Below are positions 612 to 37,411 of a stretch of DNA of 64,000 nucleotides, piece by piece; positions within the stretch are counted from its first letter, which is position 1, and every line of letters starts with the position of its first letter. The notes beneath the pieces were generated by a model. The model was not told where the DNA came from and ran no database searches. It saw only the letters and a list, made by a program, of their open reading frames with translations. Source of the DNA: Gekko japonicus (Eukaryota). The position numbers and the translations under genes are program-made. The DNA lies in assembly GCF_001447785.1 (NCBI RefSeq), contig NW_015177015.1, positions 458,165 through 522,164 of the forward strand, written 5' to 3'.

Positions 612-1263
612 GAGAATGGAGGAAGCACCAAATGCAAGTGGAATCTGCTTCCTTTGAGCTAAATAGCAATGGAAATCTTGGGGGGAGAGAAGATGAGAAA
701 TTTCCCTTCCCTACAGGCCCCAGCTTGTTTTAATCTAACTTTAATTTAACAGGGTTAAATTTTAGCCCCCAATGAAATTTATAAAACATAACTGAGTCAT
801 TTCATTGAAGTCAGGATTTAATTCTTTCTTAATGATACTTTACAGTGCTGTAAATCTTATTTGATGGAATCTTTTAACAACATATTGCATATTAATTTGT
901 ACAATTTTAAATGTTTAGACTTGGAATATAAAGAAGGGGAGCTTCAAACAGAAGAATTTTCTGTGAGTGCATATCATTATTATTGTGACATGTACAAGAA
1001 CAGATAACTTTGAAAAACACCTTGAATTAGCCCAGTTAAGATGTCTGAAAGAGGTTTAGAAACATCCACAATAAAACTTGAAAAGGGAGCTTCATGATTA
1101 TTACATACAATAGTATTGTATAGTCATTGTCCAAAATTCAGAGACTGTTAATCATCCTATGGGACTGAAATTATTAAGTTACTGTGGTAAATGTTGTCAG
1201 TGACTGTTACAAGGATTGTCCCCACTCACTGATCTTTTATGCATTTTGTACATTTATTCATGA
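612..1263 (+). repeat. 652-bp direct duplication, copy 1
   Basis: Near-identical to 2298-2949, with only a handful of substitutions by eye. Confidence 0.95.
919..962 (+). CDS. HSPB11: HSPB11/IFT25 penultimate coding exon, copy 1 (44 nt)
   Basis: ttag|AC...TCT|gtgagt; encodes (D)LEYKEGELQTEEFS, matching recalled human IFT25 DLVHTEGQLQNEEIV; syntenic next to DIO1. Confidence 0.8.
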
Positions 1264-8129: not shown

Positions 8130-8197
8130 AAATATTTTTTCTAAATCAGGTCACAGCTGCCCAAGTTTTTAGCTGTGACTATCATAAACAAATATAA
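8130..8197 (-). promoter_or_regulatory. SECIS element (form I) of DIO1 3'UTR
   Basis: Minus strand tatttgtttATGA-tagtcacagct-AAAAActtgggc-agctgtgacc-TGAt: AUGA/GA quartet, stem gtcacagct/agctgtgac and apical AAA; closely resembles the recalled human DIO1 SECIS. Confidence 0.93.
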
Positions 8198-8521: not shown

Positions 8522-8703
8522 CAAAACAAAATTTGAGTCCAGTGGCATCTTTAAGTTCAACAAAGTTGTATTCAAAGTATAAGCTTTTGTGTGCAAGCGC
8601 ACTTCTTTGGATATCTGAAGAAGTGTGTATGCACCCAAAAGCTTATACCTTGAATAAAACTTTGTTGGGTTTAAAGGTGGCACTTGACTCAAACATTGTT
8701 CTG
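8522..8703. mobile_element. Palindromic Penelope-like pLTR element in DIO1 3'UTR
   Basis: Imperfect inverted repeat of ~90-bp arms centred on gatatc (8610-8615); contains a degenerate ctgaagaagtgtg...aaagcttatacc hammerhead motif. Confidence 0.7.
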
Positions 8704-9279
8704 GCAGTTCCAATAGTTAGGGTGTGGTCTGAGTTGGAAAACCTCATGGCCACTTGGCAACCAAGGAGGGAGGTTATTATTTACATTGTTCAGCTATGTG
8801 GAGGCTACTCCGCAAGACAAGCTGTTCTTGTGAAGCTACTTGCTAAGCAGTTCTGACAATTTACCTCACTTTACCACCCGCTGTTGATGGATTCCAAATA
8901 GTTAGAAGTGATTGATGGGTTGCTTCATGTGAAAGGCTTGCAGCATGTAGCCACTTCTATAAGTTGGTTTTCAGGTGGCTACTAAACCCTTATTTGCATG
9001 TGTTTAGGCCATACTGATTTAAGCTATCAGTGTCATATAAGCAAGGGACTACTGCAGTTACCACATGATTAATCTGTTGTGTGTACTTGACCTATGTAGG
9101 GGTAATGATAGGTGCACAGTGGACAGTGCCCATTTTCCGCATATGGATGGGATTTACTCTCTTCAAATATATACAAGATTTTCTAAATGAATATTAATCC
9201 TTTTTAAAATGAACCAGCAGATTATGGAGTAATTATTTTGCTCACTTTAGGGAGCCACTAGTAGGTTTGCTTTACACAT

Positions 9280-9345
9280 TTAGAGTAGTTGTTTCAAAAC
9301 TTCACGCACTTCTTGAGGGCTATAGTTCCAAGGTCCCACTCCACC
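9280..9345 (-). CDS. DIO1: Iodothyronine deiodinase 1, exon 4 coding part
   Basis: ttttacag acceptor, then GGVGPWNYSPQEVREVLKQLL*. Confidence 0.92.
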   Translation of the reverse strand, partial: GGVGPWNYSPQEVREVLKQLL

Positions 9346-9976
9346 CTGTAAAATAAAAAATACATATTTACCCGTGAGTTTAGTCTGAAGAATTATTGGG
9401 AAGAGGGATGGTACAGAAAAGACTGACAAAAGACATTTCTAAGGTATCTGTAATCTTTTTGAAAACCTGTGTGACAAAGCATGGCAGATAATTTAATAAT
9501 TATATCTCAAATAGAAATCAAATTGGTTAACACTTAAAAAAAATCCAGTCAGTCCAGCACTCCACTCACACAGGGCTCATGGATCTTCTCCACTTTCTTC
9601 CCAGCAGTCCCTTCTGACTCCCTGGAAAGTCGATTTCTGGGGTTGCAGGGCCCATATGGTGTCACAGCAATGTGAACTGGCGGGCTGCAGTGAGGGGGCA
9701 GGGGGAGAAATCACTTCCTTCTGCCTTGTCCATCAGTGGAGCTCTGTTGACAGAAGAAGCAGCTCCATTGACAAAAGAGGAAAGAATGGTAATTTTGCCA
9801 CATTTTCCCTCTTCACTGCAGTCCACCAGCCTGTATGGTTATTATAGCACATTAGTCCTATGACTCAGGAATCAACTTCCTTGGGGTTAGAAATGGTTGG
9901 CTTTCTGTGGATGGATCAGTGGACCTAATCTTAGTCTTCCTTCTAGATTTCTGGAAGCTAAAGGCCCATGTAAATA

Positions 9977-10461
9977 CATAAGAACATAAGAGAAGCGAAT
10001 GTTGGATCAGGCCAATGGCCCATTGTTATGTACTGGACTATGAACTACATACTACGTAAGCTCCATAGAAGCCCAGTATCCTGATCTGACAGTTCTCATT
10101 GGCTGCTCCTGACAGCAGGCCAATCAAAGCATAGCAGTGTACTTGGAGGGAAAACAGTCTATTGGTCTTTATTGTGTAAATATGATTGGTTCTTACCGTT
10201 CTACTGGGCGTGGTTTCCCCAGCCCGGGATGTTTAAAAGGAGTTCTGGCTCCTATGGCTTTCTTGTGTTTAATCGTTCTTGTTAATAAAGTTGAAATCAC
10301 TTGGTTAAGAGCTGCCTGAGTATGATTCACTTCACCCATCCAGCCCAACACTCTGTCACACAGTGGCTAAAAATACCAGGTGCCATCAGGAGGTCCATCA
10401 GTGGGGCCGGGACACTAGAAGCTCTCCCACTGTTGCCACCCCCAGCACCAAGAATACAGTG
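9977..10461 (-). mobile_element. CR1 3' end interrupted by a solo LTR
   Basis: cataagaacataagagaagc...gttggatcaggccaatggcccat continues as ccagcccaacactctgtcacacag after the LTR; same family as 24345 and 41738. Confidence 0.8.
10024..10334 (+). mobile_element. Solo LTR (311 bp)
   Basis: TG...CA ends, 5-bp TSD cccat (10019-10023 and 10335-10339), CCAAT boxes, TTTAAAA and AATAAA. Confidence 0.8.
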
Positions 10462-11390
10462 TTACATGCAAACAGTTCACTATTATGTTCTAGTGAGTTT
10501 TTGTTTAGAAGAGCAGCTTTTGAAAGCTACAGTATTGAGCAGAGAAGCAATAGCGCTTAGTGACTTCTCTAGCAGCCATTTCTCTGTTCCAGATTTGATC
10601 CTAAGCTTCTGCACTGCAGGATTCTAGATACATGTTTAATCTTCCTAATGCATCTGGAATCCTAGAGGTGGTGAAAGCAAATGGGTTGGTGACCTATAGC
10701 TGAAATATTGCAGGTGGGGAAAGCATCCCTCTCTTCTCAGTTCAAAACTGCAGCCTCCTGAAGTTGGTTTTCTTACTGTGGCCATCATCCATTTGCATGA
10801 ATGTGCCATGTGTATGAGTGAGAGAGAGGAGTTAATGCTAGTGCTTTAATTTAAAGGAAGTCATAACCTATATCAGGCATAACCTAAAGTCTGATACAGA
10901 TTTAAAATTACCAAAAAATTGTTGTATAAACTTTCTGTCAAGCTATCTTCATATTTCATAGTTTTTAATATTGATTCAGAAATGATTATTGGATTAAGAG
11001 CAATAAGCCACAAAGGGTTTTATAAATTCCAGTAGAAAATATCCAGATCTTGATTTTTAGGTTTGGGACACAGTTCTGAAGCTCTGTATATAGTTTCATG
11101 TTGCAGTAAAATAATGGTATGTACAATCATTTGCCTGCATTCAGAAAGTATGTTTAGCTAAATACACAGACAAGTGAACCCTATAAGCAGATATTGCTAT
11201 ACAGACAGCCTTCACTTTTGAGATTTGATAGGAAATTTCACTATTGATGTATACAGGGAATTCTTCCATGTCATTCTTGACATTTATTTTTCTCTGTCAA
11301 TAGAAGAAATTAAGATTAGCCAAACTAATACTGATGCATTCTTTGTTTATTATTGTAAGGATTTTCACCAAATTGCTGGCATTTTGTTAC

Positions 11391-11591
11391 CTTATAGACA
11401 ACTTTTCCTCTTTGAAGCACATAAAGTCTTTCTGGCAGAGCTGCATATTTAGAACTGCTTTTGTTTTCCATAGTATCTAAAACCACTGGGCACAAGGGAC
11501 GAATCTTCCAAAAGGATCTGTGCAGCCTGTATGCGGTCTTGGAGAGTACGGTGACTTTTAATAGAAATATTTTTTTTAAAAGCCCATTCAT
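11391..11591 (-). CDS. DIO1: Iodothyronine deiodinase 1, exon 3 (201 nt, contains an apparent +1 frameshift)
   Basis: [30 protein letters not shown] in one frame, then [36 protein letters not shown] in the next; ag/gt splice sites intact. Confidence 0.9.
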
Positions 11592-11821
11592 CTGAAACAA
11601 ACATAATGATTACATTGAGTAAATAGCTTCTATCCATGGTTACATTTATTAATATCCTAAAAGATTACAGAATGGTAAACCTGCTGGGAGTAGCAAATTG
11701 TTAGGAACTGAGGCTATAAGATTTACTCATGTCACTAATGGGATCCTAAAGGGGAAATTTAAAATATTTTCTGGAAAGTTGTCTATTACATTCTGCACTT
11801 TATGCAGCAACCTTATTTTAC

Positions 11822-11965
11822 CTGAAGCGTGGGCTTCTTCAACGTAGATCACAAGGAAATCTGCTCCAAATATGAAATCTTCGACAAGCTTCTTGAACTC
11901 GCCAAATTTGAACATAAATGAAGGTCAGGTGCAGCTTCCAAATGTCAGAACCAAAGGCCTGTTAT
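11822..11965 (-). CDS. DIO1: Iodothyronine deiodinase 1, exon 2 with selenocysteine UGA at 11925-11927
   Basis: 144 nt; [48 protein letters not shown], the deiodinase catalytic motif. Confidence 0.95.
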
Positions 11966-12756
11966 CTGCAACATGTGTAAAGCAGTCCGTGAAGTACAAG
12001 GATGGTTTTATAGTGAAAGCAGCAGGGAGACAAGAGTTCTGCTGCATTGCCCTGTACTTAGGACACTCAGAATAAAAACACAAAGCCTGAGTGATCCAGT
12101 GGGGAAAGATGTACTCTGCCCCACACATTAAACCAGAATATTCACTAACACAACAAAGAACCCCAGTTCAAAAAAGTAACACTAGTAAATGTAGAAAGGT
12201 TATTTTATGATGAATACAATCCAGTGCCATGGTGGCATGTTGGGTTGGAGAGTATGATATATATTGAAATTTAAGATGGATCTTCACTTCCTATGATACC
12301 TTTTACAAGAAGTACATCTAGACTAAAAGGTGTTCTTGTCACCACTGGTAAGAATTATCTAAGTGGGAGTGGTTTTTTTTTTAAAAAAAATTAGGCATTC
12401 ACTTAATAGGGATAAGAAGTTCTATTCTCCCTCTATTGTATCTGCTTATGTTTATATTATGGATTTATAGAGCTGTTGTAGATTTTCCGGATTGTCTCGC
12501 CATGGTCTTGGCATTGGAGGACCTGACATTTTGCCAGTAGCTGTGACTGGCATCCTCAGAAGTATAACACAGAAAGACGGAGTACTCTGTCAAGGTGAGA
12601 AGAAAAATGGTAGGCATGTAATTTATATCTACTCAGGAAGTTGGGGTAGTGCTGAGTCACCCACCTTCCTGAGTAGATATATAAATTACCTGCCTACCAT
12701 TTTTCTTCTCACCTTGACACAGAGAGTACTCTGTCTTTCCGTGTTATACCTCTGAG

Positions 12757-16221: not shown

Positions 16222-16552
16222 CTTGCATGAAATCCAAGATGTGACGAACTTCCCCTCCAAGATCTATCACGGGGGTGTTGGGAGCAGGGCAGCCTTGAAA
16301 CGCTTCATCTTCCAGCCTTTTCCATTTGACTTTCAAGACAAAGAGTAGGTAGGGGAAGCTAAAGAAAGTGGGTCCCCAGTTCTCATACATGAATTTGGGA
16401 TTCCTCCCCATGCTGCTCTTTTCCCCTTGTCTCAATATATAGCTCTTTACAGTAGCTGGGAATAAGATCATAAAAAGTTTACCTAGAGCAGTACACAAGC
16501 ACACTTGCAAGAGAATCCAGGTCTTTTTTACAAATGTGCTGATTCTGAACAT
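16222..16552 (-). CDS. DIO1: Iodothyronine deiodinase 1, exon 1 coding part
   Basis: MFRISTFVKKTWILLQV...YENWGPTFFSFPYLLFVLKVKWKRLEDEAFQGCPAPNTPV...DFMQ; 331 nt, donor gtaagt. Confidence 0.95.
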
Positions 16553-29194: not shown

Positions 29195-30316
29195 TTAAGG
29201 TAAGAGGGAAATATTTTAAATACTCTATTAGTGTGTATGTAGTGTGGTTAAAGCAATGAATGCTTATTGGCATTCTGTACCTTAACATTGTGCTTAAAGT
29301 CTGAGGTAGGAATTCTAAGCTTTGCCCACTGTAACTGTTACTATGCAAGGAAAAAGTTTGCAAAATATCCTATTTGCTACTAAGTAGAAGCTCTTGTTCC
29401 AGTTCCTAAAAGGTGAATGACAGTAATAGAAACTTGGGGCTGTTTTGGTAGTCCTTGTTTACCATTTGTGTCCTGTATACGTCAGTTGGGCACATGCTTT
29501 GGGTGAGTCACATAAAACAGCTAAACAAAGGAGAGAAATCCCCATATGCCACATCTCACGTCTGTCCTAGCAGGGGCTGCTGACTTAGATCTTAACGTTA
29601 GTCTAGGAGGCAATATAAAAAGTTATACAGCTGCACAGAACACAATCTGTGTAATAGTTTTTATTAGGACCAATCAAATTGGCACAAAACACAGAAGAAT
29701 GTATGCCCAAACACCTGGACTTAGACCACCACACACTATTTTAAGGTCCTTTTTGACAAAGTGACAGGGCTCCAACACAACATTGGAATTAAAACAAAGG
29801 CAGGTAAGAAGAATAATCAGGGACAGTTTATTGAGAGGAACCAAAGCACAAGCAAGCAATCACAGTAATACTCAATACAAAAAAATAGGAAGGGCTCCCA
29901 CAAATACTTGTCCCCAGTCCCAGCACTTGCACAATACTTATCCACACTGTACCATGCGCAGAGCATTGAAGAGGAGAACAGCAAGGAGAACAGAGGGTGG
30001 TATTGCCTATCTCTGTGAGGATGTTGTTTGGGGTGGCTGATGAGTGTGCAGGGATCTAAAGAGCCAAGTTTACCTTGGACTTACACCAACTCGAAGGTTA
30101 GGAGTTCCATGAGGGATTGTTTAGCAAGGATGCCAAGCAGAAATCCAGGCAGTGGTTTGGATAGTAATTTGAGATGTCTAGAAGGGGCATGCACACACGG
30201 AACATGACAGGAAATTTTAATTTTTAAAAATGTATTATTACATTTCTACCCCGCCCTCCCCNNNNNNNNNNNNNNNNNNNNNNNNNNNNNNNNNNNNNNN
30301 NNNNNNNNNNNNNNAC

Positions 30317-35183: not shown

Positions 35184-37411
35184 TGTTAGATCGCTGCTAA
35201 CAAAGAACCGGAGAGTAATTTCAACAAAAGTGATCAGCATTATTGTAGGTAGGAACAAGCGCTTGAAAGAAGTCATAACCAGAACAACTTAACATTGGGA
35301 GCTAGGCTCCTTTTAAACATTCCTGGGCTAACGTAGCCATGCCTATTTATAATAAACAACCAATGAGGTTGTGCAGATAACTCCAATGAAAGTCCTTCCC
35401 GAATTGGTAGAGTTCTGATTGGTTGCTGTTGTGGAGCTACCAATAGCAAGTTGGCTTGGAGGAGCCTTCCTCTGGCTCCAGCTTACCATGGAGAGTTAAT
35501 GCAGTGATTCATGTAAGTCTTTTTGAATACACCACAATTCCTCCCCCCAAGTTAAAACAATGCAGCATTTCTAAAACATACATTCACTGTTTTCCAAAAA
35601 TATATGCATCAGTCATTACAATACAGTCTATTGCAATCATAATCGCCCAGGTACGATGGCGCTCGCCGTGCACGCTGAGACCTGCGGAGCTGTGCAGGCT
35701 CAGGGGGCAAACTCAACTGTGGGTCACCTATGGGCTCTACAATGACTGGGTCAGGCACACTCACTGCTGGGGTTGCAGCCTCGAAACCAGGGGTCTGCCC
35801 TGCTTCAGGAACAATACCTCTGTGTCTGGAGGTCTGAATACATACTCAGGTTCAGCAAACTCTGCTGTCGGAGAGTCAGCGCTGTCCTTCGCCCATCTCC
35901 TCCTCAGCTGGTCTATGTGGCGCCGCCATTTCCTGCCGTTAGGCAGCTCGACCACATATATTCTGGTGCCTATGTTTTCGCACACCACACCACTCTGGGG
36001 AGCCATGAGTGCCCTCCAGCATAATTCCGGGCAAATACTTTGTCCCTGGCCTCGGACATGCGCACTTTCATTGGCGTATCCTTGCGCTCTGGCTGCTGTT
36101 CATTTAAATCCGGGTACAACCGATTCAAACGGGTAGTCAAGCGTCGGCCCATTAACAACTTGGTTGGACTACGGCCCGTGGCACTACAGGGGGTGGTGTG
36201 CTGCCTCAAAAGAAAAGAGCCCAGTTTCACACTCCAATCTCCTTTGTACATTTTGCTTAAGGCCTCTGGTCATTCTGACCATTCTCTCNNNNNNNNNNNN
36301 NNNNNNNNNNNNNNNNNNNNNNNNNNNNNNNNNNNNNNNNNNNNNNNNNNNNNNNNNNNNNNNNNNNNNNNNNNNNNNNNNNNNNNNNNNNNNNNNNNNN
36401 NNNNNNNNNNNNNNNNNNNNNNNNNNNNNNNNNNNNNNNNNNNNNNNNNNNNNNNNNNNNNNNNNNNNNNNNNNNNNNNNNNNNNNNNNNNNNNNNNNNN
36501 NNNNNNNNNNNNNNNNNNNNNNNNNNNNNNNNNNNNNNNNNNNNNNNNNNNNNNNNNNNNNNNNNNNNNNNNNNNNNNNNNNNNNNNNNNNNNNNNNNNN
36601 NNNNNNNNNNNNNNNNNNNNNNNNNNNNNNNNNNNNNNNNNNNNNNNNNNNNNNNNNNNNNNNNNNNNNNNNNNNNNNNNNNNNNNNNNNNNNNNNNNNN
36701 NNNNNNNNNNNNNNNNNNNNNNNNNNNNNNNNNACGCTGTCCTTAGCTGTCAGCACCACAATGTCCTTAGAGGAGACTGGTGCCAGAGGGAGCTCGTCAA
36801 CTGCTAAAACATCACACGCAGGGGCAGGGTCTGTCCCGTGGTCGGGCAAGGGGCAGCAGCTGAGCGCATCCGCATGCCCAATGGCCTTTCCAGGCCGGTG
36901 CTCAAGGTCAAAATCATATGCTTGCAAAAATATCGTCCATCTAAGCATCCTTGGGGACAAAACGTTAGGCATTTGCTTATCAGGCACAGAAATCCCCAGT
37001 AGCGGCTTGTGGTCAGTGACCAGCACAAATTTCCTACCAAAAATAAAATCATGGAACTTTTTGACAGCCGCTACTAATGCCAGACCCAGAGAGTGATTTC
37101 AACAAATGTGATCAGCTTTATTGTAGGTACGAACAAACGCTTGAAAGAAGTCATAACCAGAACAACTTAACATTGAGAGCTAGGCTCCTTTTAAACATTC
37201 CCAGGCTAACATAGCCACACCTATTTACAATAAACAACCAATGAGGTTGTGCGGATAACGTCCAATGAAAGTCCTTCCCTCTCAGGGAATTGGTATAGTT
37301 CTGTTGTGGAGCTACCAATAGCAAGTTGGCTCGGAGGAGCCTTCCTCTGGCTCGAGCTTAACATGGAGAGTTAATGCAGTGATTCATGTAAGTCTTTTTG
37401 AATACACCACA
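35184..37411 (-). mobile_element. Internally deleted Ty3/Gypsy LTR retrotransposon in NDC1 intron 1
   Basis: LTRs at 35184-35536 and ~37085-37411; 5-bp TSD ataga; polypurine tract next to the 3' LTR; RNase H/integrase remnants TDHKPLLG, HADALS, TGRSP..LLMGR, RHIDQL; N gap at 36289-36733. Confidence 0.9.

What the first reader, a model, noticed from the sequence alone, without database searches (positions are those of the whole stretch)
11391..11965. DIO1 selenoenzyme gene has a +1 frameshift and altered conserved motifs, yet keeps its Sec codon and SECIS
Seen: exon 3 is 201 nt, whereas the flanking splice phases require 3n+2 (200 nt, as I recall for human). Homology switches frame around 11498-11513 (minus strand CTTTTGGAAGATTCGTCCCTTG), which is not in the A8 homopolymer earlier in the exon. 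The result is a TAA at 11449-11451 and a 205-aa product instead of 246 aa. That stop is 58 nt upstream of the last junction, borderline for NMD. Two usually conserved positions also differ: LVLNFGSCTU becomes [10 protein letters not shown], and EEAHxSDGW becomes EEAHASDEW. The UGA, SECIS and all splice sites are intact. Inference: either recent loss or relaxed selection of type 1 deiodinase in this lineage, a loss-of-function allele, or an assembly indel.
Basis: partly seen in the sequence, partly recalled or inferred. Interest (0 to 1): 0.8.

Follow-up and report, generated by a model that had tools for sequence, protein, structure and literature searches.

The report
Gecko DIO1 frameshift, seen only in this assembly
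The thyroid-hormone enzyme gene DIO1 does carry one extra base that breaks its reading frame in this gecko assembly, but the extra base is missing from another animal's DNA, a spliced transcript and two related species, so it is an assembly slip or one animal's allele, not a gene loss.

Summary
DIO1 lies on the minus strand in four exons. Exon 3 (11591-11391) is 201 nt where the splice phases need 200. Homology changes frame between 11507 and 11488, and a TAA follows at 11451-11449, giving 205 aa instead of 246. The Sec UGA, all splice sites and a SECIS-like element (33 bits, cut-off 35) are in place.

The "lineage loss or relaxed selection" reading fails. All four public runs I laid lack one base at 11502/11503:
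- a DNA run with the best holders' species label;
- a spliced exon 2-exon 3 RNA contig with that label, from another study;
- DNA of two related species.

The gene is therefore intact, expressed and correctly spliced in the species. The E of SDEW also occurs in Gekko kuhli and another gecko with intact frames. The spliced transcript cannot encode N at the [10 protein letters not shown] position.

The extra T, and an adjacent-pair change (L to K at 11462-11461), are private to this assembly. I could not separate an assembly fault (about 0.55) from a real null allele of the sequenced animal (about 0.38), because no run from that animal was available. Earlier notes of this scan report similar assembly-only gene breaks elsewhere in this genome (PLOD1, WDR83, STX10). 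The finding is ordinary and of low interest.

The parts
16222..16552 (-). DIO1 exon 1 coding part (ATG 16552-16550, MFRISTFVKK...FMQ plus the first base of the D codon). The donor is G|GTAAGT.
   Evidence: Pfam PF00837 E 1.3e-15, profile positions 3-100. All named hits are type I deiodinases: 78% identity to Hemicordylus, 90% to the unnamed Logan ORF P0001.
11822..11965 (-). DIO1 exon 2, 144 nt. It reads [47 protein letters not shown], with the Sec TGA at 11927-11925 and the T codon ACA at 11945-11943.
   Evidence: Pfam profile positions 115-148 for the part after Sec. X3 contig record 30 covers 11822-11967 with one other letter and no gap, joined directly to exon 3.
11391..11591 (-). DIO1 exon 3, 201 nt in the window and 200 nt in all four runs laid.
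   Evidence: tables 4 and 8.
11502..11503 (-). The surplus base: TT on the minus strand (GAAGATTCGTCC). X3 has a single T (GAT CGT = D R). X1, X15 and X16 have a single G (GAG CGT = E R).
   Evidence: table 4: 11502 left out in X1, X15 and X16, and 11503 left out in X3, in each case at the full depth of the covering contig. Table 3: 11503 A>C in X1, X15 and X16.
11449..11451 (-). Premature TAA created by the frame shift, 58 nt before the exon 3/4 junction.
11461..11462 (-). Assembly-private adjacent-pair change: AA on the minus strand where all four runs have TT. It turns MENLSSSKY into MENKSSSKY. The L is present in every sauropsid sequence retrieved.
   Evidence: table 3..
9280..9345 (-). 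DIO1 exon 4 coding part, GGVGPWNYSPQEVREVLKQLL plus TAA, in phase 0.
   Evidence: Identical to the Gekko kuhli C-terminus. X3 record 24 starts at the junction and runs into the 3'UTR.
8136..8194 (-). SECIS element in the 3'UTR (AUGA ... AAA apical loop ... GA).
   Evidence: Rfam SECIS_1 33 bits (gathering 35), E 5e-4, full model length. Fold -17.7 kcal/mol, z -2.3.

Best explanation
This is the ordinary four-exon DIO1 selenoprotein gene of a gekkonid gecko. In the species it is intact, transcribed and correctly spliced. The single extra T at 11502/11503 exists only in this assembly's sequence. It most likely entered during consensus building or gap filling of a short-read draft assembly. The gene itself encodes a normal 246-aa type 1 deiodinase with Sec in [10 protein letters not shown] and a 3'UTR SECIS.

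Shown: the extra base is absent from four other data sets, and the gene is spliced and expressed. Inferred: the extra base is an assembly fault rather than an allele.
For: -: X1 (DNA), X3 (spliced contig, another study), X15 (organism B) and X16 (organism C) each lack one base at 11502/11503, at the full depth of the covering contig.
- X3 record 30 joins exon 2 to exon 3 with 201 letters over 202 window positions. Its word depth is 157-305 on exons against about 7 on intron, so it is RNA.
- There is only one disabling change. All splice sites, the UGA, the SECIS and the colinear Pfam match are intact.
- The window has N-runs of 53 and 445 bases, typical of a scaffolded short-read draft.
- A 652-bp segment is written twice at 98.9% identity without gaps. 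That is about the divergence seen between haplotypes here, so it may be an allelic duplication artefact.
- Leads only, not tested here: earlier notes of this scan report other conserved genes broken only in this assembly, namely PLOD1, WDR83, WDR83OS, STX10 and HOXA13.
Against: - No run from the assembled animal was available, so the base was never shown to be missing from its reads.
- The site is not a long homopolymer.
- In 10424-12100 the window-private substitutions (11) and indels (1) roughly match those private to X1 (8 or more substitutions, 2 indels). The window therefore looks like a truly diverged haplotype, not a noisy consensus.
- A private TT>AA change 41 nt away is an odd kind of assembly error. 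It fits a real mutated haplotype at least as well.
- Contigs of a k-mer graph assembler normally need read support for every word.
Confidence: 0.55

Rival explanations
1. The sequenced animal really carries a DIO1 null haplotype, with a 1-nt insertion plus a linked L-to-K change. It is heterozygous or homozygous in that animal and rare or local in the species. The mRNA would give a 205-aa product that lacks the conserved C-terminal third, and it would be a borderline NMD target.
For: - The window haplotype is truly diverged, about 0.66% private substitutions against 0.5-0.8% for X1. One private indel in 1.7 kb is what natural divergence predicts.
- The insertion sits on the derived T allele that X3 also carries. 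This gives a natural two-step path: G>T, then T>TT.
- A second private, protein-changing event lies 41 nt away, at a position where every retrieved sauropsid sequence has L.
- From general knowledge, not tested here: Dio1 knock-out mice are viable.
Against: - The extra base is not seen in any of the four runs laid.
- Everything else in the gene is intact.
- Earlier notes report several essential genes of this assembly broken in the same assembly-only way. That favours a technical cause (leads only).
Confidence: 0.38
2. DIO1 was lost, or is under relaxed selection, in this gecko lineage. The T and E motif changes would be early signs of decay.
For: The frameshift and two unusual residues at usually conserved positions are present in the window.
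Against: - The frameshift is absent from a conspecific-label DNA run, from a spliced transcript and from two related species.
- SDEW occurs with an intact frame in Gekko kuhli P0076 and in P0074. P0075 has SDKW.
- X3 cannot encode N at the T position.
- Exon depth in X3 shows robust expression.
Confidence: 0.03
3. The extra base is read through by programmed +1 ribosomal frameshifting, or removed by RNA editing or slippage, so that a full-length enzyme is still made.
For: The full downstream coding frame, the SECIS and the splice sites are preserved.
Against: The DNA of X1, X15 and X16 lacks the base too. The RNA-versus-window difference is therefore genomic, not made on the RNA. No conserved shift site can exist if relatives do not have the extra base.
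Confidence: 0.01

Closest known systems
Type 1 iodothyronine deiodinase (DIO1) of vertebrates, Pfam PF00837
   Same: It has four coding exons and Sec (UGA) in the FGSCTU motif. The EEAHxSD(G)W and [10 protein letters not shown]...PERLY blocks are present, as is a 3'UTR SECIS. Every named hit is a type I deiodinase. The part after Sec is about 93% identical (my count from the alignments) to the Gekko kuhli protein.
   Different: The window copy has one surplus base in exon 3. The gecko sequences have E (or K) for the G of SDGW, and T for the N of LVLNFGSCTU.
Solved deiodinase catalytic domains: mouse Dio3 (4TR3/4TR4) and Dio2 (9H48)
   Same: The gecko part after Sec aligns over its whole length to the Dio3 catalytic domain (E 2.5e-28). 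This includes the C-terminal blocks that the 205-aa product would lack.
   Different: They are paralogues, not DIO1. The search found no DIO1 structure.
Assembly-only frame breaks in conserved genes of draft short-read assemblies
   Same: There is a single disabling indel in an otherwise perfectly conserved, expressed gene, absent from other animals' DNA and RNA. Earlier notes report the same pattern for PLOD1 and others in this genome (untested here).
   Different: Here the break comes with a private adjacent-pair substitution, and it lies in a haplotype that is really diverged. A true allele therefore stays plausible.

Membership tests
Iodothyronine deiodinase family (PF00837), DIO1 orthologue | Sequence match to the T4_deiodinase profile along the whole protein | tested here: met
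   Five exon pieces match colinear profile positions: 3-100, 115-148, 151-179, 181-216 and 217-235.
Iodothyronine deiodinase family (PF00837), DIO1 orthologue | In-frame UGA (Sec) in the G-S-C-T-U active-site motif | tested here: met
   TGA at 11927-11925 follows FGSCT.
Iodothyronine deiodinase family (PF00837), DIO1 orthologue | SECIS element in the 3'UTR | tested here: inconclusive
   SECIS_1 scores 33 bits, 2 bits under Rfam's gathering score, over the full model length, with AUGA/AAA/GA present. There was no hit at the gathering threshold.
Iodothyronine deiodinase family (PF00837), DIO1 orthologue | Type 1 rather than type 2 or 3 | tested here: met
All hits that carry a type name in both word searches are type I/IOD1. 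The solved Dio3 and Dio2 are only distant matches.
Iodothyronine deiodinase family (PF00837), DIO1 orthologue | Uninterrupted reading frame | tested here: not met
   The frame is broken in the window. It is unbroken at this site in X1, X3, X15 and X16.
Unitary pseudogene / lineage-specific gene loss | Disabling mutation shared by other individuals or related species | tested here: not met
   Absent from all four runs.
Unitary pseudogene / lineage-specific gene loss | Several independent disabling changes, or decay of splice sites or SECIS | tested here: not met
   There is one frameshift only. Splice sites, UGA and SECIS are kept.
Unitary pseudogene / lineage-specific gene loss | Loss of expression | tested here: not met
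   A spliced exon 2-3 contig continues into exon 4 and the 3'UTR, at 157-305 word depth in X3. The tissue is unknown, and contigs give no expression level.

The most novel reading that the evidence does not exclude
The assembled gecko truly carries a natural null haplotype of type 1 deiodinase, with a frameshift plus a linked L-to-K change, segregating in a wild population whose other members have an intact, expressed gene. That would be a natural DIO1 knock-out in a reptile.

Separately, gekkonid DIO1 has lineage-wide replacements at two usually conserved positions: T for N three residues N-terminal of the Sec-preceding Cys, and E or K for the G of SDGW. These might change its kinetics or inhibitor sensitivity.
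Probability: 0.35. Interest if true: 0.35.

Novelty: not a real feature. Interest (0 to 1): 0.15.

Why it matters
If the frameshift were a lineage trait, it would be a loss of one of the three vertebrate deiodinases. Dio1 is marked present in every vertebrate group in Mariotti et al. 2012 (PMC3316567). The evidence shows that it is not a lineage trait.

The practical value is a warning. Frame breaks in this draft gecko assembly need read support before they are read as biology. The gecko-wide E/K and T substitutions near the active site are a small, testable curiosity for deiodinase enzymology.

Tried and rejected
- **Rfam.** The search at gathering threshold found nothing in the window. The SECIS appeared only with the E-value threshold.
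- **Exon 2 from other geckos.** A third word search, with the exon 2 ORF, found no candidate. The T-for-N question therefore rests on the one-difference argument from X3.
- I could not fetch genomic DNA of Hemicordylus, Gekko kuhli or the Logan relatives, and I could not attempt branch dN/dS.
- **Papers.** Searches for deiodinase + gecko and for DIO1 + squamates found nothing relevant.
- **Neighbouring ORFs.** Pfam on eight long ORFs elsewhere in the window found nothing. I could not use neighbouring genes to gauge base-level assembly quality.
- **FKKN versus FKNN.** I considered FKKN a third private change. One search lists no four-run difference there, so I left it open.
- **A possible AA allele in organism B.** A second X15 contig at 11461-2 adds only about 20 nt of depth. 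I treated it as a spurious partial match.
- **Spliced model.** Exons were searched piece by piece, by reference.
- No N-run was filled.
- **Species name.** "Gekko japonicus" comes from earlier notes only. I showed only that the animal is a gekkonid close to Gekko.

Full report
**What is in the window**

DIO1 lies on the minus strand. The gene model is:
- Exon 1, coding part 16552-16222 (331 nt), with donor G|GTAAGT.
- Exon 2, 11965-11822 (144 nt). It reads [12 protein letters not shown], then TGA at 11927-11925, then [34 protein letters not shown].
- Exon 3, 11591-11391 (201 nt).
- Exon 4, coding part 9345-9280, reading GGVGPWNYSPQEVREVLKQLL and then a stop.

All acceptors end in ag and all donors start with gt.

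Exon 2 leaves one base over and exon 4 starts in phase 0, so exon 3 must be 3n+2 long. At 201 nt it has one base too many. Read from exon 2, it gives [47 protein letters not shown] and stops at TAA 11451-11449, 58 nt before the last junction. The conserved [34 protein letters not shown] lies in the next frame.

tblastn with gecko and lizard DIO1 proteins places homology in frame -1 for 11595-11488 and in frame -2 for 11507-11391. Pfam T4_deiodinase positions run colinearly through all pieces and straight across the switch, 151-179 then 181-216. So there is exactly one surplus base and no other loss of coding sequence.

Rfam SECIS_1 matches 8136-8194(-) at 33 bits, 2 bits below the gathering score, over the full model. 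The AUGA, apical AAA and GA are present, and the sequence folds into a hairpin.

**Whose genome**

The part after Sec is closest to the Gekko kuhli type I deiodinase fragment P0076, at about 93% by my count from the alignments, with an identical C-terminus. Two unnamed Logan ORFs are also close: P0074 at 95% over the exon 3 part, and P0001 at 90% over exon 1. The animal is a gekkonid gecko. Earlier notes of this scan call the genome the short-read draft of Gekko japonicus. I did not test that name.

**The decisive test**

I laid window 9200-12100 against Logan contigs of four runs:
- X1: DNA, organism A, the best holder, about 1.5% different from the window.
- X3: organism A, from another study.
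- X15: organism B, about 6% different.
- X16: organism C, about 6% different.

All four lack one base here. Position 11502 is left out in X1, X15 and X16, and 11503 is left out in X3, in each case at the full depth of the covering contig.

X3 is RNA. Its 778-letter contig joins 11822-11967 directly to 11390-11591, with 201 letters over 202 window positions. A second contig starts at the exon 3/4 junction and runs into the 3'UTR. Exon word depth is 157-305 against about 7 on intron.

With the single base, the reading is LLEDRPLCPVV in X3 and LLEERPLCPVV in X1, B and C. This lines up with LLKERPLCPVV in P0074 and LLKEHPLCPVV in G. kuhli. In this species and its relatives the exon is therefore 200 nt, and the gene is intact, transcribed and correctly spliced.

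**The motif argument**

- SDEW is not private to the window. G. kuhli P0076 and P0074 both have DEW with intact frames. P0075, another squamate transcript ORF, has DKW.
- At the T of [10 protein letters not shown] (ACA, 11945-11943), X3 differs from the window at only one base in all of exon 2. N (AAY) needs two changes from ACA, so the intact, expressed allele does not encode N either. Whether other geckos share the T could not be tested.

**What is private to the assembly**

Besides the extra T, all four runs have TT where the window has AA at 11462-11461 (minus strand). This turns MENLSSSKY into MENKSSSKY. Every sauropsid sequence I retrieved has L at that position.

In 10424-12100 the window has 11 private substitutions and 1 private indel. 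X1 has at least 8 private substitutions and 2 private indels. The branches are about equal, so the window is a really diverged haplotype rather than plain noise. The window shares the derived T at 11503 with X3, so it belongs to the same gene pool.

**Assembly fault or real allele**

For a fault:
- It is a single break in an otherwise perfect, expressed gene.
- The scaffold has N-runs of 53 and 445 bases.
- A 652-bp segment is written twice at 98.9% identity, about the haplotype divergence seen here.
- As leads only, earlier notes report other conserved genes broken only in this assembly: PLOD1, WDR83, WDR83OS, STX10 and HOXA13.

For a real allele:
- The site is not a long homopolymer.
- The count of private indels is what natural divergence predicts.
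- The insertion sits on a known derived allele.
- A private protein-changing adjacent-pair change lies 41 nt away.

No run of the assembled animal was on offer. I put an assembly fault at about 0.55, a real private null allele at about 0.38, and lineage loss and recoding together below 0.05.

**Mechanism if the allele is real**

The mRNA would keep the UGA and the SECIS but would terminate at codon 206. It would lose the C-terminal third of the thioredoxin-fold catalytic domain. That part aligns to the solved Dio3 domain 4TR3. The stop lies 58 nt before the last junction, so the transcript would be a borderline NMD target. This is inferred, not shown.

**Context**

Dio1 is marked present in every vertebrate group in Mariotti et al. 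2012 (PMC3316567). I found no paper on DIO1 in geckos or squamates.

**Limits**

Pieces were searched apart, by reference.

Noticed in passing
window 612-1263 and 2298-2949: A 652-bp segment occurs twice in direct orientation, 98.9% identical (7 mismatches, no gaps), with 1034 bp between the copies. The divergence equals the haplotype divergence seen at DIO1, so it may be two alleles written one after the other by the assembler.
   Followed up: partly
window 9976-10460 (last DIO1 intron): A very high-copy interspersed repeat, with summed word depth up to about 10^7 in the DNA runs of all three species. Many contigs skip 316-352 nt between about 10018-10024 and 10335-10376. This suggests a composite or nested element with shorter copies elsewhere in the genome.
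   Followed up: no
window 8532-8693 (DIO1 3'UTR): A long hairpin or palindrome of about 160 nt. It gives sub-threshold hits to several unrelated miRNA-precursor models (best 50.7 bits against a gathering score of 117). It looks like an inverted-repeat, MITE-like insertion upstream of the SECIS.
   Followed up: no
window 11587-11589; P0074, P0075, P0076: The G of the SDGW motif is G in every non-gecko deiodinase retrieved. It is E in this gecko, in Gekko kuhli and in P0074, and K in P0075, all with intact frames. This is a lineage-wide change at a usually conserved position.
   Followed up: partly
window 9235/9237, 11222/11224, 11461/11462: Assembly-private substitutions come in close pairs. 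At each, all of the runs laid (organisms A, B and C) agree against the window. This fits either multi-nucleotide mutation events or local consensus faults.
   Followed up: no
window 30262-30314 and 36289-36733: N-runs of 53 and 445 bases. Their odd sizes point to a scaffolded short-read assembly. They were left untouched.
   Followed up: no
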